From positions 120,280,001 to 120,344,000 of the forward strand of contig NC_083278.1 in the NCBI RefSeq assembly GCF_963506605.1: a DNA stretch of 64,000 nucleotides, written 5' to 3'. The position numbers and the translations under genes were made by a program. Below are positions 7,701 to 57,167 of the stretch, piece after piece; position 1 is the stretch's first letter; each line of letters begins with the position of its first letter. The notes below the pieces were generated by a model that saw only the letters and a list, made by a program, of their open reading frames with translations, was not told the DNA's origin and made no database searches. Origin of the DNA: Zootoca vivipara (lineage: Eukaryota).

Positions 7701-10328
7701 GGATTCCTGCAACAGGGATCGGGAAGCAGAGCCCAGCCGTGCTGGCTAGCAGCCCTCCCCTCCCCTCTCCCCGCACTCACGAGGCATAGCAGTTGTCCTG
7801 GGCCACCGTGATGCCGCTGTAGGGCAGCAGCCAGGCAATCTCCGTGCTCAGAAAGCGCTTGATGCTGTTGAGCGGCTCGTACAGCCGCCGCAGGTCCCAG
7901 TACTTGATCTTGCGGTCGTTCCCGGCCGTCACCATGAAGTTGCTGGAGCGAGCAAGGGGGAGGCAGCTCAGCGAGGGAGGTCCTGGCAGGGCCCCCCCCC
8001 CACACTGGGCTTGGTCCCTTGGGGGGTCTCCCCCCAGGCAGTGAGGGGAAGGAGGCCGGAGGAAGTCCCCCCCCCGCTAAGCCCGGCCCCCACCTGTTGG
8101 CCTTGCACCACTGGATGTTGCGCACGGCGTGGTCGTGGGCCAGGAAGCAGTGGAAGGGGTAGAGCTTGAGGGAGCCGTCCGGCTGACGCACTCGCTGCAA
8201 CAGGGAGCGGCTGGCCAGGTTCCAGAGGGCCACTGTGCCTGGAAGAAGGGGGGGGGACAGGCAGGGAGGAGGAGAATTGGAGGGGACCTCAAGGGTCATC
8301 CAGCCCAACCGCCTGAAAGCAAGAATCAGAATTCAAGCATCCCTGACAGGCGGCCATCCAACTGCCAGAGAAGGAGGGTGTGTATCACCTTCTGAGGAGA
8401 AGGCTGGGATTGGGAGCCGGAGCCTGAGCCAGGGGGGCGGGGGGGACACCCCCCCTCAGAGCCACCTTGGCACTTGGGAGTTTCAGCTGCAGAGCTTTCG
8501 CCTCTCACCATCATAGAAACCAGCCGCCAGGCGCTGGTGAGGCTTCGCCGGCATCCAGGCCAAGCTGAGGCACTGTCCGCATTCGGAGGGGCTCCCGGCC
8601 TGGATGGCCCCCACCTGCAGGGAGGCTATGCACTGGACCTGCGGGGATGGAGGAGGAGGAGGAGTCGGGGCGGGGGGAGACCAGAGAAGAAGCCCCCTGG
8701 AAACTCACGCTCAAGATCCCAGGCCTGACCCCTGCTCCCCGTGCAAAGGGGGCTCAGCGACTCCTGCCCCAGTCTTTCCAGAGCTGCAGCTGGACCGATG
8801 AGGGAAGCAGCCCCCTGCTCACGAGGAGGCTCAGGGAGCCGCCCTTTGGTCCCTGCCCCTCAGAACATGGGCAGCTTGAAGGGCTCAGAATGGGGCTCCC
8901 CCAGATCCTCCGTGGGCCTGGCAGGACGTACCTTGCAGATGGTGTGCCGGGGGGAGGACCCACCTAGGAGGAGGGGAGAGATGCTGTGAGGCAGGGAGCA
9001 GCCTCTGTGGGGTGAGAGAAAGCGCCACCCCTCCAGAGGGCTCACAAGACCCGACCCCCCACCTCAGCCAAGCCAAGTCGCCCCCTCCTACCTGACTGAT
9101 TCTCAGGCTGCTCAAGCAAAGCCCCCCTCCCCCCCCAAAGCAGGACCAAACGGTGCTCTGGGCCCATCTTTAGGGAAGCTTTTAATTTTTAACAGACCAT
9201 TGTATTTTAATATTTTGTTGAAAGCCGCCCAGAGCGGCTGATGGGCGGGATATAAATAATAAATTTGTTGTTCTCTCCAGGCATCACCCTCATTTCGTGA
9301 CTCAGGTCAGCTGTAGCCCCTGCCTTTTAAGAGAGACCCTTTTTTAAAAGGCCCCTGCAGAGAAATTGCCTGATAGCTTTTTAGGGTGGCAGCGGAGCGG
9401 TTGCTTCAAAAAGATTGCCTCTGTGTCAGAGAGACCTCAGAGAAGCAGGCGGGGGGGGGGGAGAGGACTCTTGGGCTGGGGCAGCAGCCGCCTTCTCCAA
9501 GGTCCTCCTTGGATCATGAGATGGAGACGAGGGGGGGGGAGGCTGGCTGGCTGGCTGGCCCTCAGTTAGGGAGCCAGCTGTCGGGCAGAGATGCCCTCGA
9601 AGGCTCTGCCAGGCAGAGGCCTGAGCAGTAGAGTCTCATGGAGGGTGTGTTTGGAGAGGGGAGGGGGGACTGAGCCTCCTTTATTCCCCCCCGCCGCCGG
9701 CGGCCGCCAGAGGAGGCAGAGCTGAGCACCCCCCAACGTCGCCTGCCTGCAGTCCTCATCCATCATGCCTGCAGACAGATATCATTACAAGGCTCATTAG
9801 CTGATACGGCTGGCTGAGCACCCAGGCCGCTGCCGGCCCCCCACCCCACCCCCCAGCCCCACCAGGGAGGGGGCAGCTGCCTCTTCCAGAACGTTTTGGC
9901 CGAGAGACTCTCTTCTGCCACCCCATAAAACAGCCCTGAGCTGGCAAAACACCAGCCAAGGCAGAGAAAGGGAGAAAGGGAGAAAGGGAGAAAGAAAGAA
10001 AGAATCATAGAATCATAGAGTTGGAAGAGACCACAAGGGCCATCCAGTCCAACCCCCTGCCAAGCAGGAAACACCATCAAAGCATTCCTGACATATGGCT
10101 GCCAAGCCTCTGCTTAAAGACCTCCAAAGAAGGAGACTCCACCACACTCCTTGGCAGCAAATTCCACTGCCGAACAGCTCTGTCAGGAAGTTCTTCCTAA
10201 TGTTTAGGTGGAATTTTCTTTCTTGTAGTTTGAATCCGTTGCTCCGTGTCCGCTTCTCTGGAGCAGCAGAAAACAACCTTTCTCCCTCCTCTATATGACA
10301 TCCTTTTATATATTTGAACATGGCTATC

Positions 10329-36755: not shown

Positions 36756-39700
36756 TCAAGGCAGGCTGCTGTCCAGGCTGGGGCCCCCCTCCTCCTCGGG
36801 CAGGCCCTGGCCGTGCACCTTCTGGTGACGCTTGTAGTTGTCCCAGTGGCCAGTGGTGTAGGGGCAGATGCGGCACTGGAAGGGCTTCTCGCCCGTGTGC
36901 CTCAGCATGTGGCGCTTGAGATTCATACTCTGGTTGCAGGAGTAGGAGCAGAGGCGGCAGCGGAAGGGCTTGTCCCCCGAGTGGATGCGGCCGTGGCGCT
37001 TGAGGTTGGCCAGGTTGCCGCAGGCGTAGGGGCACAGCGGGCACTTGTAGGGCTTCTCTCCCGTGTGCACCCGCTGGTGGCGCTTGAGGTTGTCAAGGTG
37101 GGCCGAGGCGTAGGGACAGAGGGCACAGGCGAAGGGCTTCTCCCCACTGTGCGTCTTCATGTGCCGCGCCAGGTGGTTGGGGTAGGTGGTGACGAAGGGG
37201 CACAGCTGGCACGAGAAGCCCTTGGGTGACGAGGGCTCGGCCCCCAGCACCGCCAGGCTGCAGCGCCCACACACCGGCTCGCCCAGGCCCTCGTCCGCCT
37301 CCAGGACTAGTCCGCACGCCCGGCACGTGAAGGGGAAGAGCAGCTCCGGGAGGACGGCCGTAGAGTCCTCGGACCTCAGGAACGGGGAGCCTGGGGCCAA
37401 GAGCGGAGGCTCTGCGGAGGAGAAAGAGCAGTGAGTGGGGCAAAGGGGGCTGGGCGAGGGAACCCCTGCAGCCCAAAACGTGAACCACGTTCTGCGCTCC
37501 CGCACGCAGCGTCCACCTAGAGCCCCCCTTTCCTCTTATCTGCTCCAGTTGGTTCCCACACGGCTGGACTCTGCCGACCCCGTAGAGGTTAGGCTGAAGA
37601 TCCCTTCCAATAAGGAGGCCACAATCTTGGGAAGCAGAAAAAGGAATTTGTTGGTTCCCCACTACTTGCTAGGAATGGCTTTAAATCAGTCATAGAATCC
37701 TAGAGTTGGAAGAGACCACAAGGGCCATCCAGTCCAACCCCCTGCCAAGCAGGAAACACCATCAAAACATTCCTGACAGATGGCTGTCAAGCCTCTGCTT
37801 AAAGACCTCCAAAGGAGGAGACTCCACCACACTCCTTGGCAGCAAATTCCACTGTCGAACAGCTCTTGCTGTCAGGAAGTTCTTCCTAATGTTTAGGTGG
37901 AATCTTCTTTCTTGTAGTTTGAATCCATTGCTCCGTGTCCGCTTCTCTGGAGCAGCAGAAAACAACCTTTCTCCCTCCTCTATGTGACATCCTTTTATAT
38001 ATTTGAACATGGCTATCATATCACCCCTTCACCTTCTCTTCTCCAGGCTAACCATGCCCAGCTCCCTAAGCCGTTCCTCATAAGGCATCGTTTCCAGGCC
38101 TTTGACCATTTTGGTTGCCCTCTTCTGGACACGTTCCAGCTTGTCAGTATCCTTCTTGAACTGTGGTGCCCAGAAGTAGACACAGTACTCCAGGTGAGGT
38201 CTGACCAGAGCAGAATACAGTGGTACTATTACTTCCCTTGATCTAGATGCTATACTCCTATTGATGCAGCCCAGAATTGCATTGGCTTTTTTAGCTGCTG
38301 CATCACACTGTTGACTCATGTCAAGTTTGTGGTCTACCAAGACTCCTAGATCCTTTTCACATGTACTGCTCTCAAGCCAGGTGTCTCCCATCCTGTATTT
38401 GTGCCTTTCATTTTTTTCTTTTTTGCCCAAGTGTAGTACTTTACATTTCTCCCTGTTAAAATTCATCTTGTTTGCAAGGGACTTCCCGGGGTCTCCTGGT
38501 CCAATCCCTTATGTAGGAATTGCTGCTGCTAAGGAATCGCTGATAGATGGCCAAGCAACCTCTTCCTAATGTGGAGTTGGAATCTCCTCCCTCGTCATTT
38601 GAAGCCAAGGCTTCAGATCCTGCCCCCTGGAGCAGCAGAAAATAAGCTGGCTCCATCTTCCAGGGGACAGCATTTCCAGACTTCTCATGGCCAACTGTCA
38701 GGAACGCTTTAGTTGAGATTCCTGGACTAGATGACCCTTCCAACTCTACATTGCTAGGATTCATAGAAACATAAGGAAAGCCTGCTGGATCAGGCCAACG
38801 GGCTCCTGTACTCGCAGTGGCCAAGAGCCTTCAAACTCTTGCTCTCTTCTCCAGGCTACACGGACCCAACTCCCACAAACATTCCTTATAAGGATGGATT
38901 TCCAGACTCCTTCCAGCTTGTCAATATCGTTTCATTCCAAAGCTAAACAGCTCTTACTGTCCGAAAGTTATTCCCAATGTTCAGCCCAATGATTCAAAGG
39001 ACAAGGAAGGAGATACCCACTAAAGTTTAAGAAGAGCTTCCCGACAGCTGTCTACCAGCTCCATCTGGTACGCAGACTGAGACCCTACCTGCCCACACAC
39101 TGTCTTGCCAGAGTGCTGCATGCTCTGCTATCTTCTACTTGGACTACTGCAATGCCCTCTACGTGGGGCTACCTTTGATTCGGAAACTACAACTAATCCA
39201 GAATGCAGCAGCAAGACTGGTGACTGGGAGCGGCCGCCAGGACCATATAACACCAGTCCTAAAGTATCTTACATTGGCTCCTGGTATGTTTCCAAGCACA
39301 ATTCAAAGTGTTGGTGCTTGACCTAAGTGGCCTCGGCCCTGTATACCTGAAGGAGCGTCTCCACCCCCAGACACTGAGGTCTTTGCCGAGGGCCTCCTGG
39401 CAGTTCCCTCCCTGCGAGAAGTGAGGTTGCAGGGAACCAGACAAAGGGCCTTCTTGGTAGTGTCACCCGCCCTGTGGAATGCCCTCCCATCAGATGTCAA
39501 GGAAATAAACAACTATCTGACTTTTAGAAGACATCTGAGGGCAGCCCTGTTTAGGGAAGTTTTTTATGTTTTATCGTGTTTTCAATATTTTGTTGGGAGC
39601 AGCCCAGAGTGGCTGGGGAAACCCAAGCAGACGGGTGGGGTATAAACAATAAAATCATTATTATTATTTATTATTATTATTATTGTTGACAGTAAGAGCT

Positions 39701-41256
39701 GTGGAACCAGCTCATTAATAAGGGTGAGGACTGGAGGGTGCTCACTGGAGGTTGCTAAGCAGCTGTTGGGTGGCTATCTGTCCGGAAGTCTTTCTGCATT
39801 GCAAGGGGTTGGACCCCCACCCCCGCCCTGCCCCACATACCTGTCTCCTGCTCTGCAGTCGCTGGGCCCTCCATCTCCGCCTCCGACTCCCCCTGCGCCC
39901 CGGGGCTGTGGCGCTGCAGGGGGTTGCCCCGGGCACATCGGCAGGTGCAGGAGCCGCAGCGCAGCGGGCGCTCCTGGCCATGGACCCGCTGGTGCCTCTT
40001 GAGGTTGCCGAGGCTGCTGCAGGCAAAGGGGCAGGTGGGGCATCGGTAGGGCTTCTCTCCCGTGTGGGTGCGCAGGTGGCGTGTCAGGTTGACCAGCTGG
40101 GCTGAGGCGTAGGGGCAGTGCGGGCAGCGGTAGGGCTTCTCCCCATTGTGGGTCTTCATGTGGCGCTTGAGGTGGCTGGAGTAGTGCGAGGCAAAGGGGC
40201 ACAGCTGGCAGGAGAAGACCACCCGCCCCTTGGCGGAACCTTCTTCCTCCTCCTCCTCCTCCTCCTCCAGCTCTTCCTCCTCGGGCAGGCAGCAGGCGGC
40301 AGAGGCGGGCGCAGGCAGGCCGCAGTGCTGGCAAGCCCGGCCGGGCCCCTCGCCATTGTCCTGGGCCTGGCACAGTGGCGGGAACTCCTCATCACTCAGC
40401 ACGTAGGACGAGAGTCCGGGCGTCCCCCCGAGGGAGTCTGTGGCACACAAGGAGGGGGCATCAGGGGGGCAGCGGGGGGCATCCTCACCTCCGCCAGTCC
40501 CTTTCCTGCTGGCACAACAGGGGGTTACCACAGTGGGGGGGGGAGCGATCCCTAACCCTTTTCTGGCAGCCCTGGGGGAGCCCTTCCTCTGCCTGCAGCC
40601 CCCCTGCCCATCCGCCCCTCCCCCCATAGCTGTCAAGTTCTCCCTTTTTTTTTAAGGGAAATTCCCTTCTGCTGAATAGGCTTCCTCGCGAAAAAAGGGA
40701 AAACTTGACAGGTCTGATTCCGCGCTGCGCTCCGACCCTCCCGGCTGCCTCTGCCCGCCGCCCGCTTCCCGCCGCACCTTCCGAGTCCTTCTCGAAGGCC
40801 AGGCTGGCGGCGGCGCCGCTCTCCTCCTCGTCGTCCTCGTCCTCCAGCTCCAGCTCGTGTTCCGAGAGGAAGGCGCCCGGCGGAGCCAGGCCCTCCTCGC
40901 CCGGAGGATCGACCGCCGTGCCCGCCGCGTCCACTGCAAGAGACCGAGACGGGGAGGGGCGGACGGGGCGATCCGGTCAGAGACGGGCGCGGCGGTCCCG
41001 GGCAGCCCCGCCCCCGCCCCAACCCGGAAAAGGACCCCCACACGCCCCCCGCCACCCACACGCCCCCCGCCACCCACACGCCCCCCCCCCGCCGCCCGGT
41101 CCAAGCGGCGAGTCCGTATCGGCGGAAGAGGCTCCCTTTACCCGCCCCGGAGGGACCCGGACGGGGCCCCCGCCTCCCCACGCGGCCCGCCGCCCCCGAT
41201 CCCGGCCCGCGCTGACCTTTGACGGGCTGCGGGTGGCGCTGCTTCCGGCGGGGCAT
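36756..41256 (-). CDS. ZNF513: C2H2 zinc finger protein 513, about 482 aa, 3+5 fingers
   Basis: Exons 41217-41256, 40778-40933, 39841-40437, 36756-37411 (1449 nt). Begins [13 protein letters not shown]; fingers include [16 protein letters not shown] and [16 protein letters not shown]; syntenic with SNX17. Confidence 0.95.
37690..38470 (-). mobile_element. Young CR1 LINE 3' fragment (~780 bp)
   Basis: ORF2 C-terminus ([32 protein letters not shown]...); 5' truncated. Confidence 0.92.
39040..39685 (+). mobile_element. L2-type LINE 3' fragment
   Basis: [34 protein letters not shown] and a (tta)n tail; related short tails near 9165-9265, 24405-24563 and 25665-25775. Confidence 0.8.
40625..40716. 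mobile_element. Mini-MITE hairpin in ZNF513 intron 2
   Basis: ctgtcaagttctcccttttt ... aaaaagggaaaacttgacag; ends resemble the TIRs of the 21018 element; no clear TSD. Confidence 0.6.
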
Positions 41257-43900: not shown

Positions 43901-44267
43901 TAGAATCATAGAATCGTAGAGTTGGAAGAGACCACAAGGGCCATCCAGGCCAACCCCCTGCCAAGCAGGAAACACCATCAAAGCATTATTGACATATGCC
44001 TGTCAAGCCTCTGCTTAAAGACCTCCAAAGAAGGAGACTCCACCACACTCCTTGGCAGCAAATTCCATTGCCGAACAGCTCTTACTGTCAGGAAGTTCTT
44101 CCTAATGTTGAGGTGGAATCTTCTTTCTTGTAGTTGGAATCCATTGCTCCGTGTCCGCTTCTCTGGAGCAGCAGAAAACAACCTTTCTCCCTCCTCTATA
44201 TGATATCCTTTTATATATTTGAACATGGCTATCATATCACCCCTTAACCTTCTCTTCTCCAGGCTAA
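43901..44267 (-). mobile_element. Young CR1 3' fragment
   Basis: Near-identical to the 37690 and 56454 copies. Confidence 0.9.
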
Positions 44268-44564: not shown

Positions 44565-45829
44565 GTGAGGGTGCGGGAGAATCACGGGCAATGCTCTGGC
44601 CCTGCAGAACTGGCCATCTTACGCTGGTGTAACATCAGCAGAGAAAAAAATATACAATTTGCACTTCAAGCCAAAACATATTTATTCAGAAGTAAGCCCA
44701 TTCAGATCAGTGGGACTTGCTCCCTAGTAAGTGGGCATAAGATTGCAGCCTTTAGATGGGATCCTGCACGCTCCCAGCACAACAGTGGAAGGGAACAATC
44801 CGCCTGCAGTTTGAAACCCCTTTGGAGCTCCCACACCTAGGCCAATGAGAAAGCACCGTGCTTTTGACTGGGGGACACAAAGAGAAGGCGCGGCAGATAG
44901 TGAAGCTGAGTCCCCAGAGAAGCCGCCTCCAGACGGACCCCAGGAGCATCCCTTGGCCAGACCCAGCAAGGGATGGAGAAGAACAGCAACAAGCCAAAAA
45001 GGAAACTGCACACCTCAGGAGCCTCAGCCAGGCATCTTCTGCCCAAAATATACCCCATAGTTTTAAGAAGCATTGTCATAACAATTGTGGGCTCCCTTCC
45101 TCAAACCCTCCAAGCTTCCAGGGTACTTATGGGACTCCCCGGATTTCCTTGATGGTGCTACATTTAGCCCCCAAACACTTCTGCTTTATATTAAGCAGCC
45201 CACAAATAAAAACAGCTTTGGAGGAAAACAAGCATTGTCAGGTGTGTCGGAGGATCTGCAGCCAAATCACAGAGTGCATGATAGCTAGATAGTCACATAT
45301 CCTCTAAACTTTTGTGGCAGTAAGGGAAACAATATAAAAATAATCTCTCCTTCTTCCTGTCACTACACACCCTTTTCCCTATCTGTGCTCTTCTTCAGAA
45401 AGCAATCTCCAGTTTCAACTGGACAATGGGTATTTGTTTAAGGATTCCTGCCTGCCTGAATCCCATCACTTTATATGTTGAATCCTGGCAAGACTTTGAT
45501 GTGAGTAAGACAGTGATCCCTCACTGCTGTCCAAGGGTGAAGGAAGGGCTGTTTGTCCTGTCCTCTACTGAAGTCAAGTGGCTGGAGGGTGGAGCATGGT
45601 ACCGTAGGCAGGGAGAAGCAGCAGAGGAACAGCAGCAGCTGCACCCAAGGGAACCTTTGGGGATGAAAGGGGTCCCCAGAAGAATGGGGTCTTCACACAC
45701 TCCCCTCTTGGAGGCTGCTTTGCTTCAGAGGTGATGCCCCATCACACACTGATTATTGCATCCCGGGTCTCGCCATTGATTCCTAAGGGAATTTCGTACA
45801 ACAACCTTGGGGGAGAGAGAGGAAGTGCA

Positions 45830-46234
45830 GAGGGCCTGCTCTTGTAGCATACGGTAGATATCACCATCATGTAACGGAGGAGGTGGAAAGTCAGGTCGAT
45901 GGAGAGCGGCGGGTCGCGGTGCTTCGGGCGCTCGGCCAGGCGGCGGCGCAGCAGCTCCACGTCGTGGCCCGAGCGCGGCAGCGAGCGCACCAGCAGGGCA
46001 GGGCCACCCCGTCGGGCCCCGGAGCCGGCAGCGGGGGTGGGAGGGGCCAGGCGGCGGCAGCGGCGGCACGGTCCTCCCCTAGGAGCAGCAGCCGCAGCCG
46101 CAGGCTCAAGTCGCTCTCGGCGCTGCCGTCGAGGACCGGCGCTGGCCTGACTCCGAGAGCCGCATGTGACACCAGCAGGAGCGAGGCCACGAGGATGGGC
46201 AGCTGCGCCCGCCTCGTGCTGGGGTGGTCCAGGC
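45830..46234 (-). pseudogene. UCN: Urocortin 1 pseudogene, coding exon
   Basis: Mature-peptide signature DPPLSIDLTFHLLR (45874-45915); signal peptide RRAQLPILVASLLLVSHAALG. Lesions: ACG at the start position (46215-46217), frameshift near 46000, KHR at the processing site, second frameshift before QEQA, and no amidated C-terminus. Confidence 0.85.
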
Positions 46235-46599
46235 CTAGAAGGGGAGAGGAACAGAACATCATGAGAACCCTGGAGTCGCCGGATCAGGCCGAAGGGGGCC
46301 CGTCGGGGCCCGCAGCCGTTTCTCGCAGCGAGCAGCCGGAGAGCGCGAGGCAGAGGCTGAAGCAGCCACGACGCCCACCTGTAGAGCAGCTCATCACCCC
46401 CCCCCACTGCCCCGTCCCTCCTTCAGCTCTTCGCCCCTCATGTTCCCCGGGCAAACTCTAGGGCAGAGAGGACTGCGCCCTCACCCAAGTCCCTCACCAG
46501 CCATCTCTCAGCCGCTCCTGGTGTCCGATGCCAACAGGGGGCGACACGGGGCAGGCGGGCCCCGGACCAGGCTCCCTCCTCAGGAAATATCTATCTTCC

Positions 46600-48459: not shown

Positions 48460-49299
48460 AGATTCTAAGCACGCCGAATTCGGTCGGGAGCAGCCGCTGT
48501 CCGTGGTGCTGAACAAGCGCGACCGCTCTCCCTGTCTCTGTCCAGCCTCCGGGTCTGGAGACGCGCCTCGCTCCCCAAGAGCGCAGCCCCCCGCGATTGT
48601 CCTCTCCTATCCCGACTCCTTCTTTCTGGGATGTTGCCCAAACTGGCGCCCGCGAACCCTTCCGCCCAGTGGTAGGAGGGCAGGTGGGGGGAAGGCTGCG
48701 CTCGTACTCCCCAACCATCATTCCTCTAGCCAGTGACTAAGGTCTCCCTCGATGCCAGGGGCTGGGTTAAGGGAGGGGGTCAGGGAGGGGTCTGCTGCTC
48801 GCTTCCCGATCTCCACAGCGGAAGGAGTGCTCATAGTGGCTGGGAAAGGTCTCGGGCTCAAGGAGGGGGGGGGAAGCAGATGCTCGGAGTGCAGAAGGTC
48901 CCAGGTTCAATCTTTGCGTCCCCAGGTAAGGTTGGTAGACTCCAGGGAGACCTTGGAGAGCCTCTGCCTGTGGAAGCGGACTGTCTGGGGACAGAGGGGT
49001 CGCTCCGAAATGCTTTGACATGCCCTTTCCCTCTCCTCACATACAATTACGTATCGGATTGAAAAACAGATAGTATGGTCCAGCAGGAAGCCTTACTGAG
49101 AGAGTCCACAATCCTACAATTCTCCTCCATGACTTCCTTATGCAGAGCTCTCTGGTCAGGATCCAGGAACGCCCACTCCTGCTCTGTAAAATACACAGCG
49201 ACATCTTCAAAGCACAGAGGACCCTGAAGGAAAAAGAAAAACGTCCTCTTCTGAGACAGCCTAAAGATTATCTATACATTGCTTGGTTGTTTTCTGTCT

Positions 49300-50105
49300 G
49301 TTGATTGTTGTGGCGGGGAGGCCTTCCGTGGGGGCCTTTTCAGGCCGGCCCCCCCCGGCCCGTTTTAAAGGCGCGACAGCCGCGGACGCCTCTCCGTTCC
49401 ACGGCAGCACCCTGACCAGGAGCGCGGGGGTTCCTTGGCCTACGATCCGCTGGAGTCCGGTCCCATGGCCCGCCCGCCGGCCGGCCACCGTTGCATGCCA
49501 GCCGGGAACCCAGGGACCTCGCCCTGCGCCGGCCCCCGTGACCAAGGCTCCGTCTCCGAGGCTCTCCGCTCGCGTCATTGTGGCCAAGTGGCGTCTCCCG
49601 GTGCAGCCGTCACTGCGGGGCTTTCTCGGGGGCGGGGGGGGCACCTTCCCAAGATGCTGTGCGGCGGCGGCGCTGGAGCTGCGGGGAGGCTCTGTTGAGC
49701 GCCGAGCAGACCGAGGCCGGTAAGGCGGTGGCGCTGCTGGCGACCCCGGAGTCCTGCCGGTTCCGAGGACCAAAGGCCCGGAGGAAGTCTGACCTGCCAG
49801 GCGCAGTCCCCTCCTTCCCGGAAGACCTTGGCACGGCCGCCGCCGCCCTAGCCGAGCGGTTTGGCGCAACGGATGCGCGGGGCGCTCCGGTTCTGCTTGC
49901 ACTCTCTGCCTTCCACCCGCAGGTCGCTCGGAGCCTGAGTGGATGGGGACCGGCGAACTGCAGGCGATGAGCCGACTCCTATGAGGGCGCTGGCGGGGAT
50001 GGGGAGGAGCCGGGCCTCGGGGCGCCCCTCTGCCGCCCGGACAGCCCGCGGGCCTGAGTCTCTGGGGCAGCAGCAGCGTCGCCCGGCGGCGGCAGCAGCA
50101 GCAGC
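49300..50105 (+). promoter_or_regulatory. CpG-island promoter and 5' leader of the RNF19-like gene
   Basis: CpG-dense region extending through exon 1 to about 51050. Confidence 0.65.
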
Positions 50106-53100
50106 ATGAAGCGGCCGCTGGCGGAGCCTCCCTCCCGGGGCGCCTCGGGCCTCTTCGGAAGGCAGCCCGCAGCAGCGCCGGAGCCGGAGGACGCGCTGAG
50201 CCGTGCCGAGGAGGCGTCCGCGGGGACCCCGTCCATCCCAGCGCCGACTGCGGAGGACGAGGCGTCGGGGGGCTTGCGAGAATGCCCTTTGTGCCTGCTG
50301 CCCCAGCCCGCGGCGGCCTTCCCGGAGCTCTCGTCGTGCGCGCACCTGTCCTGCCTCACCTGTCTGCAGCAGTACCTGCGCATCGAGATCAGCGAGAGCC
50401 GCGTGCAGGTGGCCTGTCCGCACTGCCCAGCCCCGCTCCAGCCGGCAGAGGTGCACCAGCTGCTGCGCCCGGAGCCCGCCTTGCGCGACAAGTACGAGGA
50501 GTACCTGCTCCGCCGCCTGCTTGTCGCCGACCCGGGAACGCGCTGGTGCCCAGCCCCGGATTGCAGGTGCGCTAGGCCGGCGCGGGGGGTGAGTGGGATA
50601 AAGGCCCGGTTGCTCCAGGAAAGGACCCGCTTTGCGCGCCCAAGGGCCCGGTGGCCAATGCCCGACGGCCCTGGAAGAGACCCTCCCCTGCATGACCCCC
50701 TGGAGAGAGGGAGGGAGTGAGGGAGGGGGTGGGGTGGGGCCACCCAGAGCTGCCTCGCAAGAAGGCGGCTTCGGAGGAGGTTGCTTTGTGACCGGTTGTG
50801 CGCTTGCCTCCCACCAGAGGGCGTTCAAGGCCGGCTCGGCTGGTTCTTCTCAGGAAGACCCTCAGAAAGAGCACAGTCCAATCCTTGACCCCTGGATGCC
50901 GGGAAGGCGCCCCTGCAGAGCTCAAGGCACCTGCGGGCCGTCTGTCCAGCCTGTTGCGCACAGCCCGCCCGCCCGCGGCCCCCAAGTCCGCTCACTTTGT
51001 TTCCCCGCCTGACGATGCTGCGACCCCCCCCCCCCCGCAAGGGCGGGCACCGGGCAGGACTTGGTTAGGGAAATCAGAACTTTTTTTTAGAGTGGGGCAG
51101 AACAAACGTGATTGTTTAGTTAAGTATTTCTCTTGTTTCACTTGATCTGGGGGGGGGAGCTGCCCCCCCTGGCTACGCCCATGCCCAAGCCTCCCTCAGC
51201 ACCTTTGGGCCCGGGGGTGGGGTGAGGAGGAGCTGTGCTTCCTGCTTTGCCTTGCAGAGAACTTGCAAGCCGGGAGGAGAAAGGGTTGGCTGGGGGGAGG
51301 CCGCTGGGGGCTCTGACTCCGCCCAAAGGCATCTCAGTCTGTTCCCAAGCTGGAACTGCGAAGCTGAAAACAGAAATAAAAAAATTCCTTCAGTAGCACC
51401 TTAAAGACCAACTAAGTTTTTATTATGGTATGAGCTTTCGTGTGCATGCATACTTCTTCAGATACACTGAAACAGAAGCGTCAGAATTTTTTTTTTATTT
51501 TTGCTTCGACTCAGACCAACACGGCTACCTACCTGTAACTAGAACTGAAAACAGAAGTTATCCCCCTCCCTCCCCGCGCAACACATCACACATTTCCCGT
51601 CAATTAAGGTGAAACACGTGTACTGTAATTCTGAATTGGATTGTGGAAGTAAGATTCTAAAGGTCTCGGGAAGGAAGACCTGTCCAGGCACATTAGAAGC
51701 GCAGCTGGCCGGGAGGCGCCCCTCGCCTCAGAGAGTCGAGCAGGAGCCTCTGGTGCCTGGAGGCCATAGACCAGAGTTTGGTTATTCCCGGCTGCAGAAT
51801 CGGGGCCCCAGACGGCAGCAGACAGTGGCTCCGGCCAGCCGTCTCACGAGGCCTTCCTTAGGGGGCGGGAGTGGAGAGTGGAGCTCACTGCTTCCCCCTC
51901 CTCTGCCATGTCAGGAAAGGACCACCATCTGGTTACGTGAGAGCCCGGTATCAGTAAAGGAGGGGGCAATGTCCCACTGGGCGGGGAGGACCAGGAAGGG
52001 CCAGGACAGCCTAACATTCTGATCCCCCTTTTCCTCCCGCTTCCAGAAGTGGCGGACTTGGGGGGGCGGGTTTATCGTGCTTACCCCTTTCTTCTAAAAG
52101 CGCCTCTGCTTGCAGCTACGCGGTCATCGCCTACGGCTGCGCCGAGTGCCCGCGCCTGGTCTGCGCCCGCCCGGACTGCCGCACCGAGTTCTGCTTCCAC
52201 TGCCGGCAGCCCTGGCACCCCGACGCCTCGTGCGAGCAGGCCTGGCGAGAATGGAGCCAGCAAGCGCCCCTGGGCGCCATGGAGCTCTCCCTGCAACTGA
52301 TCCGGAAGGAGGAAGCCGGGGCGGCGGCGCCAGGGGCTGCGCAGGGTGAGTGAAGCCCCCTTCCCGAGGGACGAGGGGGCGACGGCAGTGGGAAGGGCAG
52401 GGGGCTTTAGGGGGCCCTTTCCCCGCCTAAACGCCCCTCTCTCTCCTCTCGGCCCCCGGGCCTGAGAAGGTCTCGGCCCCGACCTGCCGCCTCTCTCCCC
52501 GCAGACAAGGACGCCATCAAGGTCTGCCCGCGCTGCGGGGCGCTCATCATGAAGGTCAACGACGGCAGCTGCAATCGCATGAACTGCACCATCTGCGGCT
52601 GCCTCTTCTGCTGGCTCTGCCTGCGCGAGATCACCGACGTCCACTTCCTCAGGTGCGACCTGGGGGGCGGAAAGAGGCGGGGGGCGGGCGGGCGGCCCAA
52701 GGAAAGGGCAGCAGGACAGGCTTGGCTCTTCCCAGCCTGCAGAAGTCGACTAAGGCGGCCGTCCTCCTTGTCCCGCTTGCCCGGAGGAAGCCCCGTCGAA
52801 GCAGACGCAAAAGGGAGGAAGGGAGCTCCGCTGGATTTGCACTCGCCCCTCATGGCGTTTATTGTGAAGCGGTTTGGTTCTGCTGGCTACCTGACCTGGG
52901 CAAAGACCGGCTCCCTCGGCCTGAAAGCGGAAATGAGCGCCGCACCCCAGAGTCGAATTGGACTGGACTTAACCGTCCAGGGGTCCTTTACCTTTTTATC
53001 CTTTTCTATACAGTGAAATAGTCCATCCCTCTCTCCTGCTAAAATGACAGGACGGAATGCAACCTAAACCCAAAGAAAATAATCAGCTCGGTGGACAACA

Positions 53101-55677
53101 GTTTCCCAATTCATAGAATGGTAGAGTTGGAAGAGACCACAAGGGCCATCCAGTCCAACCCCCTGCCAAGCAGGAAACACCATCAAAGCATTCTTGACAT
53201 ATGCCTGTCAAGCCTCCAAAGAAGGAGACTCCACCACACTCCTTGGCAGCAAATCCCACTGCCAAACAGCTCTTACTGTCAGGAAGTTCTTCCTAATGTT
53301 TAGGTGGAATCTTCTTTCTTGTAGTTTGAGCAAGGATCTTGTAATTGAGCAGGGATGCTTTGGATGCGACGCCTGCGTTGCAGCGGGTTGGACTGGATGA
53401 CCCCTGGGAAACCCTTTAGAATTCTACAGTTCCGTGATTCTATGAAATGCAGCCAAGGTTGACCACGAAGCAAAGTCCCGCCGGAGCAAAAGATGTTCTG
53501 GAGGGGCGGGAGGATTATCAGGAGGGAGGGAGGCGAAAACGTGGCAGGTGGATGGGCGCCTCGGCCTGTCAATCACATGGCAGTTATTAGGATGTCACGT
53601 GAGGGGCAGGTGAGTTGGGCTGCCCCACCTGTCAAATATCCTTTCCCCTCCAATCTTAAAAGGGACTGGGAGAGGTATGCAAAATCCATAGACTCATAGA
53701 AGTGTCGAGTTGGACGGAGCCCCCAAAAGCGAAATGGGGAGCTGGTGGTGGGGCTCCCCAAGAGGAGGCGCTCTGGTGCTCCTGTGGATGCTCTTCGACA
53801 CCCCCCTTGCTGACTCCCCCCCTTGTCGTCTCCTCAGTCCTTCCGGATGCACCTTTTGGGGGAAGAAGCGCTGGTCGCGCACGCGGAAGGTCCTGTGGCA
53901 GCTGGGGATGGTGCTGGGCGCCCCGATGGTGATCTCGCTGGTGGCGGGGATCGCCGTGCCCGTCATCACGCTGGGCATCCCCATCTACATGGGCAAGAAG
54001 GTAAGGAGGCCGCGGCTGCCCGGCCGTCCTGCTGCGCCCAGCCTGAAGGGGCCCAGAGGGAGGAGACCCACTGCCGCCTCCTTCTCCGCTCCCCGCCAGG
54101 TGCTGAGCCATGGACGCAAGAGCAAGCTTTCCGGCTGCCAGCAGTGCCTGTCGGTCGTGAGCAGCATCCTGCTCTCCCTCTTCGTGTCGCCCGTCATCAC
54201 CGCCGTCACTGTGGGTAAGGGCCACCAGGGGGTGCCTACCCGGCCGCGGCAGAGGGCACTGCTGCTGAGTGGCTAGAGCACCTGCCTCGCAACCAGGAGG
54301 TCCCGGAGGGTTCAGTCTCCAGGAAGGGCTGAGAATCCCCCACCCTAAACCCTGGAGAGCAGTTGCTGCTGCCAGTCAGTGTACACGGTATGGAGCTATT
54401 GAATGCAACTGCTCCTCTTCTTGTTGGACCCATCAGGACTAGAATCTTAATTCATTTTCATAGAAGAGCTGTATCTCCGCGGTGGAGCATCTGCCTTGCA
54501 TGCAAACGGTCCCGGGTTCACTCCCCGCGGGCATCTCCAGGAAGGGCTGGGAGAGACTCCTTGCGGCTTTCTCTGGTCCTGGATCGGCTGCTCCTCGGCC
54601 GCACCTCACACCAGCCTCTCTGCCCGCAGGCGTCGGGGTGCCCCTGATGCTCACCTACGTCTACGGGGTGGTGGTACTCTCGCTGTGCCGGAACCGCTGG
54701 GGCTGCGGAGGCGCACGCAGGAAGGCCGGGGAGCTCAGGGCCGTGGAGCTGGAGAACCTCGCCAAACGTACGTGAGTCCTGGGCCGCAGGAGCAGCGGGA
54801 GGGGGCGGCCTGGCCCGGAATCCCCTCTCCCTCAGCCAAGGCTCCGTCCCAACCGGGTGGGCGGAGAGCTCTCAACCGGTAGGGGGGCTGCAGTATGGAA
54901 GGGGCTTTTGTGGCAGAGACCCTCTGCCGGTCATCCTTGAAGCCTTGAGTCCTCTCTGCCCTCTCCGGTGCCAAGCGGACTAGGAACATGTTCATTTGGT
55001 TGTGCATTTATCTTCTGCTTTTTGCTGTAGTATCATTATGAAAGCCAGCCGGAGAACTTTTGATTTAAGGTGCCATATCACCTCTGAGCAAATCCTCTCT
55101 CCTCCTTCCTCTGCCTGTTGCAGTGAACGAGCTGCTGGCTGCGCTCCCCGCGCCGATGGGGGCTGAGGGAGGGGGGTCTTCTGCCGCCGCCGCCGCCGCT
55201 GCCGCCGCCATAGCTGCGCCCTTCCTGCCCAGCCGGAGCAGCGGGCAGCTGGAGGAGTCCTGCTCGAAGGGCCCGGAGAGCCCGTGGAACGAAGAAGCAG
55301 CCCAGGCCGCTTCCCGCAGGTCAGTCCAGTGGGCGGGGGCAGTGCGGTCTAGTGGTTAGAGTGCCGGGCCCAAGCTACCTCGCAGTGTTGTTCTGAATAT
55401 ACAATGGGGTGGGGAGAACCATCTAAGCCACGTGGAGCGCCTTAGAGGAAAAACGTGGGATAGAAATGTAATTATTATAAAATTATGCCCCCGGCCTTTT
55501 TTATGCTCTGTCCCGCGCAGGGACGGGCAGAACAGGATGGAGGTGGAGGTGGAGGTGGAGCCTCCGGCCGCCCACGAACACAGCCTCTGCAGCGCGGCGT
55601 CGGGCCAAAGCTTCTCCACAGATTCGCTCACCTACACCAGCGACGGCTGCAGTTTGGCCGGAGTGAGGACGGAGTGA
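50106..55677 (+). CDS. RNF19-family RBR (RING1-IBR-RING2) transmembrane E3 ubiquitin ligase, about 535 aa
   Basis: Exons 50106-50566, 52116-52345, 52505-52652, 53838-54000, 54100-54214, 54630-54767, 55124-55319, 55521-55677; 1608 nt, open frame, all GT-AG. RING1 [31 protein letters not shown]; [29 protein letters not shown]; RING2 [26 protein letters not shown]; [11 protein letters not shown] followed by hydrophobic segments. Confidence 0.92.
51386..51540. mobile_element. Penelope-like terminal fragment
   Basis: ttccttcagtagcaccttaaagaccaactaag...agaccaacacggctacctacctgtaact; same family as 26792. Confidence 0.7.
51428..51465 (-). ncRNA. Minimal type I hammerhead ribozyme motif
   Basis: Minus strand reads GUAU-CUGAAGA-A-GUAUGC-AU-GCACAC-GAAA-GC-UC-AUAC: conserved core boxes, stem I GUAU/AUAC, stem II, minimal palindromic stem III. 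Confidence 0.6.
52850..52997 (+). mobile_element. Sauria SINE 3' fragment
   Basis: ggctccctcggcctgaaagcggaaatgagcgccgcaccccagagtc...cctttaccttt. Confidence 0.7.
53111..53328 (-). mobile_element. Young CR1 3' fragment
   Basis: Same family tail, with a small internal deletion. Confidence 0.85.
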
Positions 55678-55854
55678 TGCTGCTTCGCCGCCTGCCTCCT
55701 GCTGCAAAGATGGACTCGCCCGCCGCCTCCACTGGACTGGCCAGCGCAGATGCCCCCCATCCACCCGACACCCCCCTGCCTGCACACCTTCTGCACTCGA
55801 GCCCCACCCTCACCCGTCAACAATTCCAGGCTCTGGACTTTGGTGCTTTGAGGC

Positions 55855-55860
55855 AATAAA
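55855..55860 (+). terminator. AATAAA poly(A) signal of the RNF19-like gene
   Basis: Canonical hexamer about 180 nt after the stop codon. Confidence 0.8.
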
Positions 55861-56453
55861 TTTGCAGCTCACAGAGAAGCCGGCCTCATCTTTCCTCCCC
55901 AACGGGTGAGGGCCCAGCGCGCCGCCTCCCCTCTCCAGGGACCAGGAAGAAGCCTGCACCCCCCTCCCCTCGAGGACCCTGCAGAGCACAGCTTGGGGGG
56001 AGGGCTGGTCAGTCAGGGTGGAGAGGACCGAGTAGCGGGGGGGGGGACAGTAGCTGTTGTTTGAGTCATGAAAAGGGACCTTTGGAGGAGGAGGAGGATG
56101 GTGGTACTAATACCTAATACCCCACCCATCTAGCTGGGTTTCTCCAGCCATATATTGAGCTAGTAAGAGGATTTGGAACTGACTGTGCAGGAGGAATAGG
56201 ATTGTAGAGTTGGAAGCGATCCCAACCCCCTGCGAGGCAGGGATAATTCAGAGGAGACTGGGCAGTGTGTTGTGGGCAAAGAGCAGAACCCCTGCCAGAG
56301 AGAAGAGTAGGAGCCTTTGAAAGAGGATTAGACCAATTCATGGAGGAGGGAAAGGCTCTCCATGGCTCCTAGCCAGGGTGGCTCTGCTCTGCTCTACCTC
56401 ACAGTTGGAGGCAGTGATACTTTGGAATCTGTTTTTGGAAACCACAGGAGGGG

Positions 56454-57167
56454 TCATAGAATCAAAGAATCATAGAGTTGGAAGAGACCACAAGGGCCAT
56501 CCAGTCCAACCCCCTGCCAAGCAGGAAACACCATCAAAGCATTCTTGACACATGCCTGTCAAGCCTCTGCTTAAAGACCTCCAAAGAAGGAGACTCCACC
56601 ACACTCCTTGGCAGCAAATTCCACTGCCGAACAGCTCTTACTGTCAGGAAGTTCTTCCTAATGTTTAGGTGGAATCTTCTTTCTTGTAGTTGGAATCCAT
56701 TGCTCCGTGTCCGCTTCTCTGGAGCAGCAGAAAACAATCTTTCTCCCTCCTCCATATGACATCCTTTCATATATTTGAACATGGCTATCATATCACCCCT
56801 TAACCTTCTCTTCTCCAGGCTAAACATACCCAGCTCCCTAAGCCGTTCCTCATAAGGCATCGTTTCCAGGCCTTTGACCATTTTGGTTGCCCTCCTCTGG
56901 ACATGTTCTAGCTTGTCAGTATCCTTCTTGAACTGTGGTGCCCAGAACTGGACACAGTACTCCAGGTGAGGTCTGACCAGAGCAGAATACAGTGGTACTA
57001 TTACTTCCCTAGATCTAGATGCTATACTCCTATTGATGCAGCCCAGAATTGCATTGGCTTTTTTAGCTGCTGCATCACACTGCTGACTCAAGTCAAGTTT
57101 GTGGTCTACCAAGACTCCTAGGTCCTTTTCACATGTACTGCTCTCAAGCCAGGTGTCACCCATCCTG
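56454..57167 (-). mobile_element. Young CR1 LINE 3' fragment with an open ORF2 C-terminus
   Basis: About 210 uninterrupted codons of CR1 ORF2 ([23 protein letters not shown]...VFKQRLDRH). Confidence 0.92.

What the first reader, a model, noticed from the sequence alone, without database searches (positions are those of the whole stretch)
50106..55677. Intact third RNF19-family RBR ligase at a locus where human has none: candidate retained ohnologue
Seen: a complete 8-exon, ~535-aa open gene with a CpG promoter, canonical splice sites and a poly(A) signal, lying between UCN and PPM1G. It is clearly RNF19-type but divergent, and its C-terminal tail is much shorter than RNF19A/B. Established (from recall): human has only RNF19A (8q22, next to SNX31, the SNX17 paralogue) and RNF19B (1p35), and SLC30A3/SLC30A8/SLC30A2 and TRIM54/55/63 tie 2p23, 8q and 1p into one paralogon. 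Inference: this is a whole-genome-duplication copy kept in reptiles and lost in mammals, i.e. an uncharacterised membrane E3 ligase. It has introns, so it is not a retrocopy.
Basis: partly seen in the sequence, partly recalled or inferred. Interest (0 to 1): 0.85.

Follow-up and report, generated by a model that had tools for sequence, protein, structure and literature searches.

The report
Ancient third RNF19 ligase gene
This lizard carries an intact, spliced and conserved third member of the RNF19 membrane ubiquitin-ligase family. The gene dates back at least to the common ancestor of bony vertebrates and was not found in mammals. Two of its three presumed active-site residues are replaced, so it probably works differently from RNF19A and RNF19B.

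Summary
Window 50106-55677 (+) holds an 8-exon, 1608-nt, 535-aa gene with GT-AG introns throughout, a CpG-island start and an AATAAA signal. It lies between UCN and PPM1G.

It encodes RING1-IBR-RING2 plus two transmembrane helices and a short disordered tail. Spliced RNA contigs reproduce six of the seven predicted junctions.

A careful tree gives three vertebrate clades: RNF19A, RNF19B and a third, called "C" here. Each clade has 100% bootstrap support, and C is sister to B (98/91). Clade C runs from bichir, gar and teleosts through coelacanth, lungfish, salamander, caecilians, alligator and birds to squamates. An AU test rejects a recent squamate duplicate (p = 1e-51).

No mammal, turtle, frog or shark member was seen. 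That absence rests on a truncated hit list and is not proven.

All zinc ligands and the catalytic Cys are invariant in C. The neighbouring His is Arg in 128 of 132 C sequences, against His in all 239 other RNF19s. The triad Glu is Leu or Gln.

Databases already hold the gene under inconsistent automatic names (RNF19A-like, RNF19B-like). I found no paper describing it. A WGD origin and the biochemical effect of the remodelled site are inferred, not shown. Other readers of this scan had already noted the His-to-Arg change on this same window.

The parts
49300..50700 (+). CpG-island promoter region and 5' end of the gene
   Evidence: GC 0.73 and CpG obs/exp 0.85. The transcription start itself was not mapped.
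50106..50566 (+). Exon 1: start codon, low-complexity N-terminus (aa 1-57), RING1 and the start of the IBR
   Evidence: A spliced contig of run X1 covers 50119-50560 and joins to exon 2.
52116..52345 (+). Exon 2: IBR and the linker
   Evidence: Junctions 50566/52116 and 52345/52505 are seen in an RNA contig.
52505..52652 (+). Exon 3: RING2 (Rcat)
   Evidence: Pfam IBR_1 at 29.3 bits. It aligns to the RING2 of ARIH1 and ARIH2.
52570..52572 (+). Codon of the catalytic Cys253 (TGC)
   Evidence: Aligns with the active-site Cys of ARIH1/ARIH2 in the motif GGCNHM. Invariant in all 68 aligned RNF19 proteins.
52576..52578 (+). Codon of Arg255 (CGC), at the position of the RBR active-site His
   Evidence: It is Arg in 128 of 132 clade-C sequences and His in 239 of 239 other RNF19 sequences.
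52603..52605 (+). Codon of Leu264 (CTC), at the position of the triad Glu
   Evidence: Glu in all A, B and invertebrate sequences; Leu in lobe-finned and tetrapod C; Gln in ray-finned C.
53838..54000 (+). Exon 4: [11 protein letters not shown] motif and the first transmembrane helix (aa about 297-332)
   Evidence: Hydropathy. Modelled helix 294-339. Junction 54000/54100 in contigs of X1 and X5.
54100..54214 (+). Exon 5: loop and the start of the second transmembrane helix
54630..54767 (+). Exon 6: end of the second transmembrane helix (to aa about 392) and the juxtamembrane segment
   Evidence: Junction 54214/54630 is seen in X1 and X5, and 54767/55124 in X1.
55124..55319 (+). Exon 7: disordered Ala/Ser-rich tail
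   Evidence: pLDDT is below 50.
55521..55677 (+). Exon 8: conserved acidic MEVEVE motif, C-terminus and stop codon
   Evidence: A contig of X5 covers 55526-55776.
55855..55860 (+). AATAAA poly(A) signal

Best explanation
This is a functional gene for a third vertebrate RNF19 paralogue, called RNF19C here. It is a membrane-anchored RING-between-RING ubiquitin ligase.

Origin. The gene arose by duplication of the RNF19B/C ancestor before bony vertebrates diverged. Going by the tree, the duplication also predates the split from cartilaginous fishes, and it most likely came from the vertebrate whole-genome duplications. The gene has stayed in the SLC30A3-GTF3C2-EIF2B4-SNX17-ZNF513-UCN-PPM1G neighbourhood.

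What is shown:
- an intact 8-exon gene;
- spliced transcripts;
- a separate, old clade whose branching follows the species tree;
- complete conservation of the zinc scaffold and the catalytic Cys;
- mostly synonymous change within the domains.

What is inferred about mechanism. By homology with RNF19A/B, RING1 takes ubiquitin-charged UBE2L3 and passes ubiquitin to Cys253 of RING2 at a membrane surface. The next step differs. The His that acts as general base for transfer to lysine in HOIP and HHARI is Arg here, and the triad Glu is Leu. Discharge must therefore use another chemistry or another acceptor, or be slow. I put about 55% on an active ligase with altered acceptor or kinetics, as in RNF216, which works without that His. 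I put about 25% on a weakly discharging regulator.
For: Gene model and splice sites. Domains. Fold: the AlphaFold model of the 96%-identical Podarcis lilfordi orthologue has RING1 at pLDDT about 90+, two long helices at 294-339 and 346-395, and a disordered tail. All of its top Foldseek hits are RBR ligases: RNF216, ARIH2, HHARI, HOIL-1, parkin and HOIP, with E down to 1e-9. Expression: spliced contigs of 837 nt (exons 1-2-3, depth 142) and 423 nt (exons 4-7, depth 360) in a related species, and a spliced exon 4-5-6 contig in the same species. Phylogeny: A 100/98, B 100/99, C 100/100, B+C 98/91, and vertebrates against amphioxus and invertebrates 100/99. AU test p = 1.3e-51 against a squamate duplicate of B. 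Constraint: the listed differences from the related species' transcript are 15 synonymous and 10 non-synonymous nucleotide changes over 311 and 922 sites (pN/pS about 0.22). Only 2 changed codons fall in the RBR-TM core. Against P. lilfordi there are 4 differences in the 338-aa core and 17 in the other 197 aa. All Cys/His ligands are 100% conserved in clade C. Active site. Role of the His, and RNF216 as an exception: PMC7458406. RNF19A uses UBE2L3, Cys316 and at least one TM helix: PMC13038411.
Against: Two raw RNA-seq runs of the same species showed no reads on the exons. Only about 6% of each run was sampled and the tissue is unknown, so expression is low or restricted there. The clade-C stem is very long (0.91 substitutions per site), so its position as sister of B could be partly a long-branch effect. 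No cartilaginous-fish member was seen, although the tree implies one once existed. The pN/pS figure uses only the differences that the reads tool listed and is not a full count. No biochemical data exist for any member. Loss of two triad residues would also fit an enzyme that no longer ligates.
Confidence: 0.85

Rival explanations
1. A recent squamate or sauropsid duplicate of RNF19B (or RNF19A) that diverged quickly.
For: Annotation pipelines call it 'RNF19B-like' or 'RNF19A-like'. Its closest paralogue by identity is RNF19B, at 51%.
Against: Clade C contains bichir, sturgeon, gar, teleosts, coelacanth, lungfish and amphibians in species-tree order. Forcing the squamate copies together with gecko RNF19B costs 479 log-likelihood units, p-AU 1.3e-51.
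Confidence: 0.01
2. It is this lineage's RNF19B orthologue, merely fast-evolving, so there is no third gene.
For: RNF19B was not found in this genome itself. Some bird members of clade C are named plain 'RNF19B'.
Against: A gecko RNF19B (P0540) and bird RNF19Bs (Loxia, Malurus) fall inside clade B with mammals. Coelacanth, gar, bichir, Rhinatrema, Geotrypetes, Betta, Salmo and Scleropages each have both a B and a C protein. The gene lies next to PPM1G, not in the RNF19B neighbourhood (the human RNF19B location is from recall).
Confidence: 0.02
3. A catalytically impaired pseudo-ligase. It still folds, binds E2 and perhaps accepts ubiquitin on Cys253, but it does not ligate efficiently. It would act as a regulator or as a partner of RNF19A/B in the membrane.
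For: Both non-Cys triad residues are replaced. In HOIP and HHARI, mutating the His leaves thioester formation intact but blocks transfer to amines, and in parkin it impairs both steps (PMC7458406). The stem branch is long, with 17 clade-fixed changes.
Against: The catalytic Cys and every zinc ligand have been invariant for over 400 million years, which is unexpected if catalysis were dispensable. RNF216 is active without the His. The Arg itself is conserved rather than variable, which suggests it has a role.
Confidence: 0.25
4. An old paralogue that came from a small-scale duplication and transposition, not from whole-genome duplication.
For: No synteny comparison across the three loci was run here. 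No shark or lamprey C gene was seen.
Against: The B/C split lies below the shark-plus-chimaera branch of B. The window holds SLC30A3, SNX17 and UCN. From recall, their paralogues (SLC30A8/SLC30A2, SNX31, CRH) lie on the human chromosome arms that carry RNF19A and RNF19B.
Confidence: 0.2

Closest known systems
RNF19B (NKLAM, IBRDC3)
   Same: Sister clade (98/91). Same RING1-IBR-RING2 layout followed by the [11 protein letters not shown] motif and two transmembrane helices. Same zinc ligands and catalytic Cys.
   Different: Only 48-51% identical, whereas A and B are 69% identical to each other. Differences: His to Arg and Glu to Leu in RING2; SRKKK to SRTRK next to the membrane; a tail about 200 aa shorter that lacks the LEVQADVQKE / DNAST.AMAGSI block; a different chromosomal neighbourhood.
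RNF19A (Dorfin)
   Same: Same architecture. The acidic M/LEVQVDIE-type motif near the C-terminus is recognisable, as MEVEVEVE. By homology the E2 is UBE2L3, and the RBR core plus a TM helix suffices for activity (PMC13038411).
   Different: 48% identity. In squamates RNF19A evolves at least twenty times more slowly: the Podarcis-Rhineura path is about 0.016-0.022 against about 0.42-0.5 for C. 812 aa against 535 aa. Active-site His and Glu are retained in A.
RNF216 (TRIAD3)
   Same: An RBR that lacks the active-site His and is still an active ligase (PMC7458406). It is the best Foldseek match of the model (8eb0, E = 1.3e-9).
   Different: A different RBR subfamily. It is soluble with no TM helices, has its own RING2 insert, and shares 23% identity over the aligned part. 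The resemblance is functional analogy only.
RNF144A/B
   Same: Small RBR ligases anchored by a C-terminal transmembrane segment (PMC7458406).
   Different: One TM helix, no RNF19 signature motif, and not in the RNF19 clade. Not compared by sequence here.

Membership tests
RBR (RING-between-RING) E3 ubiquitin ligases | RING1 with C3HC4 zinc ligands | tested here: met
   C60, C63, C78, H80, C83, C86, C104 and C107 are present and 100% conserved in clade C. Pfam RING hits fall below the curated cut-off when exon 1 is scanned alone. The model has pLDDT of about 90+ here.
RBR (RING-between-RING) E3 ubiquitin ligases | IBR domain between the two RINGs | tested here: met
   The Pfam IBR match is split over exons 1 and 2 (19.5 and 22.9 bits, each below the 24.3 cut-off because the domain is cut by the intron). 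All Cys/His ligands 148-193 are conserved.
RBR (RING-between-RING) E3 ubiquitin ligases | RING2 (Rcat) with an active-site Cys | tested here: met
   Pfam IBR_1 at 29.3 bits (cut-off 27) on exon 3. Cys253 aligns with the active-site Cys of ARIH1 and ARIH2 and is invariant.
RBR (RING-between-RING) E3 ubiquitin ligases | Cys-His-Glu/Gln catalytic triad in RING2 | tested here: not met
   Arg255 replaces the His and Leu264 replaces the Glu. The review notes that the triad is not universal among RBRs, citing RNF216, so this does not exclude membership.
RBR (RING-between-RING) E3 ubiquitin ligases | Overall fold like solved RBR structures | tested here: met
   54 PDB matches with E <= 0.001. Every match listed is an RBR ligase. 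The model was made from the P. lilfordi orthologue, which is 96% identical to the window protein.
RBR (RING-between-RING) E3 ubiquitin ligases | Forms a ubiquitin thioester from an E2 and transfers it | not testable with these tools
   Needs biochemistry.
RNF19 subfamily | Falls inside the RNF19 clade of animals | tested here: met
   Vertebrate A+B+C are monophyletic against amphioxus, crinoid, mollusc and arachnid RNF19 (100/99).
RNF19 subfamily | [11 protein letters not shown] motif and two transmembrane helices directly after RING2 | tested here: met
   The motif is invariant. Hydrophobic stretches at 297-332 and 349-392. Modelled helices at 294-339 and 346-395.
RNF19 subfamily | Long C-terminal regulatory tail (about 300-400 aa) | tested here: not met
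   Only about 140 aa follow the second helix, and the central conserved block of the A/B tails is missing.
RNF19A orthologue | Groups with RNF19A of other vertebrates | tested here: not met
   Clade A (100/98) excludes it. Podarcis lilfordi has its own RNF19A, P0343.
RNF19B orthologue | Groups with RNF19B of other vertebrates | tested here: not met
   Clade B (100/99) excludes it. AU test p = 1.3e-51.
2R ohnologue of RNF19A/B | Duplication node older than the gnathostome radiation and younger than the amphioxus split | tested here: inconclusive
   The topology fits: C is sister to a B clade that already contains sharks and a chimaera, and amphioxus lies outside. No cartilaginous-fish C was seen, and the stem is long.
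2R ohnologue of RNF19A/B | The three loci lie in paralogous chromosome blocks | not tested
   The window shows SLC30A3, GTF3C2, EIF2B4, SNX17, ZNF513-like, UCN and PPM1G beside the gene.

The most novel reading that the evidence does not exclude
Clade C is a His-less, Glu-less RNF19 ligase conserved in most non-mammalian bony vertebrates. Its invariant Arg next to the catalytic Cys would redirect ubiquitin discharge away from ordinary lysine aminolysis. The new target could be another acceptor, such as a hydroxyl, lipid or small-molecule group at the membrane. Alternatively the enzyme could hold a long-lived thioester with a regulatory role. Either way, mammals would have lost a distinct branch of membrane ubiquitin chemistry.
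Probability: 0.25. Interest if true: 0.75.

Novelty: new variant of a known kind. Interest (0 to 1): 0.55.

Why it matters
RBR ligases are usually counted as 14 human enzymes, and RNF19 as a pair (A and B). This result shows that the ancestral bony-vertebrate set had a third RNF19. Fishes, salamanders, caecilians, crocodilians, birds and lizards still keep it under purifying selection. Annotation hides it under inconsistent names: the same orthologue is labelled RNF19A, RNF19B, A-like or B-like in different species.

Its active site is a natural experiment. The scaffold and the catalytic Cys are frozen, while the general-base His and the Glu are replaced in a clade-specific way. That makes the disputed role of these residues in RBR catalysis directly testable by swapping them between paralogues. 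It also bears on the newly found ability of RNF19A/B to ubiquitinate a small molecule.

For comparative genomics, this is a clean example of an ohnologue candidate lost in mammals. Expression or knockout work in zebrafish or chicken that cites 'rnf19a' or 'rnf19b' may in fact concern this gene.

Tried and rejected
- **Exon 1 search.** Exon 1 alone was searched against the 50%-identity representatives. It gave orthologues but no tetrapod RNF19A or RNF19B, so those had to be reached indirectly. An amphioxus query brought in RNF19A. A search restricted to the near-invariant RING2-TM1 stretch of a teleost RNF19B brought in RNF19B; I chose that stretch after a rank simulation on RNF19A.
- **Earlier notes of this scan.** Word searches for RNF19A and RNF19B found nothing, so their presence in this very genome is untested.
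- **Long ORFs in the window.** Pfam scans of ten long ORFs elsewhere in the window gave no significant match. Such ORFs are frequent in this GC-rich DNA. The neighbours were identified instead by amino-acid composition and motifs, then by Pfam.
- **Raw RNA runs X19 and X20.** They gave no exon coverage. This is not evidence of silence, because only about 6% of each run was read.
- **'Lampetra planeri' RNF19B-type protein (P0435).** It nested among percomorph fishes and was dropped as probable contamination.
- **Literature.** Searches for rnf19c, RNF19A-like/RNF19B-like, RBR ohnologues, the Dorfin subfamily and teleost rnf19 genes found no description of a third vertebrate paralogue.
Full report
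**Method note.** The joined 535-aa protein was never typed or sent to any search tool. It was assembled from /data/window.fa inside scripts only, and used there for local alignments and trees.

**The gene.** Reading 49800-56100 and checking by script gives eight + strand exons: 50106-50566, 52116-52345, 52505-52652, 53838-54000, 54100-54214, 54630-54767, 55124-55319 and 55521-55677. All introns are GT..AG with pyrimidine tracts. The phases join into 1608 nt, which is 535 codons plus a stop. At exon 6 the donor at 54767 is the correct one, because the alternative four bases downstream runs into a stop codon in exon 7. AATAAA lies at 55855. The start sits in a CpG island (GC 0.73, CpG obs/exp 0.85). 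Pfam finds RING1 and the first half of the IBR in exon 1, the second half of the IBR in exon 2, and RING2 in exon 3. Two hydrophobic stretches follow, at aa 297-332 and 349-392.

**Surroundings.** Motif and composition scans followed by Pfam give this order:
- the SLC30A3 3' end (+, about 2.9 kb);
- GTF3C2 (-);
- EIF2B4 (-, IF-2B domain);
- SNX17 (+, PX domain);
- a C2H2 zinc-finger gene that fits ZNF513 (-, 39.8-40.6 kb);
- a UCN remnant (-, 45.7-46.4 kb, only 16 of 38 CRF positions matched);
- a KRAB-box exon (-, 49050-49271);
- the RNF19-type gene (+);
- PPM1G (-, last coding exon ending near 59781, PP2C domain at 61.6-62.0 kb).

**Expression.** Logan contigs from a related species (run X1) include an 837-nt contig joining exons 1, 2 and 3 and a 423-nt contig joining exons 4 to 7. 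Every junction is GT..AG at the predicted base. A same-species run (X5) has a spliced exon 4-5-6 contig and a contig over exon 8 and the 3' UTR. Two raw RNA-seq runs of the same species, read to about 6%, covered only the intronic repeats. Expression is therefore real but low or restricted in those samples.

**Relatives.** Exon 1 found a tight group of proteins that annotation calls 'RNF19B-like' or 'RNF19A-like' in squamates and birds. A full-length Rhineura member then retrieved the same kind of protein from snakes, lizards, many birds, alligator, axolotl, caecilians, coelacanth, lungfish, sturgeon, bichir, gar and teleosts. No mammal, turtle, frog or shark appeared among the 120 best. Orthologues from turtles, frogs or mammals would be expected to score at or above the alligator and amphibian members, which were listed.

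RNF19A proper (Podarcis, Rhineura, Paroedura, chicken, turtles, mammals, a shark, teleosts) came from an amphioxus query. RNF19B proper (a gecko, birds, mammals including platypus, caecilians, coelacanth, gar, bichir, chimaera, sharks, teleosts) came from a search on the RING2-TM1 stretch.

**Phylogeny.** The careful tree has 68 rows and 535 columns, under LG+C20+F+G4. Support values (UFBoot/SH-aLRT):

| Grouping | Support |
|---|---|
| RNF19A | 100/98 |
| RNF19B | 100/99 |
| Third clade C | 100/100 |
| B + C as sisters | 98/91 |
| Vertebrates against amphioxus and invertebrates | 100/99 |

Inside C the order follows the species tree. The window protein is sister to Podarcis lilfordi. Holding the squamate C proteins together with gecko RNF19B costs 479 log-likelihood units (p-AU 1.3e-51). 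The stem of C is long (0.91 substitutions per site), and C evolves much faster than A. Identities for the window protein are 96% to P. lilfordi C, 78% to Rhineura C, 68-70% to alligator and kiwi C, 57-58% to gar and coelacanth C, 48% to Podarcis A and 51% to gecko B. A and B are 69% identical to each other.

**Constraint.** The differences listed between the window and the related species' spliced contigs are 15 synonymous and 10 non-synonymous nucleotide changes over about 311 and 922 sites (pN/pS about 0.22). Six of the eight changed codons lie in the low-complexity N-terminus. This is a partial count, because the reads tool lists only the best-supported differences. Against P. lilfordi there are 4 amino-acid differences in the 338-aa RBR-TM core and 17 in the remaining 197 aa. 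Every zinc-binding Cys/His and the catalytic Cys are 100% conserved across the 29 clade-C rows.

**Active site.** The RING2 motif is DGSCNRMNC. It aligns with DGGCNHMVC of ARIH1 and NGGCNHMQC of ARIH2, so Arg255 occupies the place of the active-site His. Counts among all sequences retrieved:

| Set | His position | Glu position |
|---|---|---|
| Clade C (132 sequences) | Arg in 128 | Leu in lobe-finned fishes and tetrapods; Gln in ray-finned fishes |
| Other RNF19: A, B, amphioxus, invertebrates (239 sequences) | His in 239 | Glu in 239 |

The clade-C exceptions are three sea-eagle isoforms with His and one falcon with Cys. In all, seventeen positions are fixed in C and differ from a residue fixed in both A and B. 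One example is SRKKK to SRTRK next to the first helix.

The review PMC7458406 states that the His is needed for aminolysis but not for thioester formation in HOIP and HHARI. It also states that the His affects both steps in parkin, and that RNF216 is active without it. PMC13038411 shows that RNF19A and RNF19B work with UBE2L3, and that RNF19A needs Cys316, the RBR core and at least one TM helix.

**Structure.** The model of P0170 built with a 45-row alignment has a confident RING1 (pLDDT about 90+), moderate IBR and RING2, two long helices (294-339 and 346-395, pLDDT 75-82) and a disordered tail. All leading Foldseek matches are RBR ligases, with RNF216 first.

**Interpretation.** The gene is a real, expressed, constrained third RNF19 paralogue of great age. 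The tree places its origin before the bony-vertebrate radiation and, read literally, before the shark split. Together with the neighbouring SLC30A3, SNX17 and UCN genes, whose paralogues I recall lying on the RNF19A and RNF19B chromosome arms in human, this fits a whole-genome-duplication origin. That step is inferred.

Mechanistically it should accept ubiquitin from UBE2L3 on Cys253 at a membrane. What happens next is open, because the general base is gone. An altered but active ligase seems more likely than a dead one, since the Cys, the scaffold and the Arg itself are all conserved.

**Novelty.** The sequences are already in public databases, with inconsistent automatic names. Six literature searches found no paper that recognises a third vertebrate RNF19 or its remodelled active site. 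I therefore class it as a new variant of a known kind and give it moderate interest.

Noticed in passing
window 49050-49271 (-): A strong KRAB-box exon (Pfam 68.8 bits) lies on the opposite strand, about 0.8 kb upstream of the RNF19C start and at the edge of the same CpG island. It could belong to a divergently transcribed KRAB zinc-finger gene. It might splice to the C2H2 exons at 39758-40651, which would place the UCN remnant in an intron.
   Followed up: partly
window 45745-46422 (-): The UCN reading frame matches only the first 16 of 38 positions of the CRF family model (23.1 bits).
   Followed up: partly
window 51232-51625 and 52808-53398 (introns 1 and 3); similar copies near 56478-56759, 10118-10204, 37803-37886 and 44019-44102: Interspersed repeats draw very deep RNA-seq coverage from all four runs, with many loose ends and inverted joints. 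The reads come from copies elsewhere in the genome, not from this gene.
   Followed up: no
protein P0435 (labelled Lampetra planeri): An RNF19B-type protein filed under a lamprey nests among percomorph teleost RNF19B, next to Betta and Nerophis, in the quick tree. It is probably fish contamination or a mislabelled contig in that assembly.
   Followed up: partly
proteins P0187, P0218, P0243 (Haliaeetus) and P0202 (Falco): These are the only clade-C sequences without the Arg. The sea-eagle isoforms have His again and also lack the GCTFWG motif. The peregrine falcon has Cys. They may be lineage-specific reversion, decay or sequence errors.
   Followed up: no
window 50245 (exon 1): The related species' transcript lacks 21 nt in frame (7 codons) in the low-complexity N-terminus. 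This part of the protein is free to vary.
   Followed up: no
window 1-46500: The gene order differs from the human order as I recall it. Here UCN lies between the ZNF513-like gene and PPM1G. No TRIM54 or DNAJC5G was noticed between SLC30A3 and GTF3C2, which suggests a local rearrangement.
   Followed up: no
C-termini of clade-C proteins: Fish, lungfish, coelacanth and amphibian members end in a hydrophobic residue after Ser/Thr/Asp (for example ...TDSV...EANIV), like a PDZ-binding tail. Sauropsid members, including this one, stop a few residues earlier, at ...TE or ...AE.
   Followed up: no
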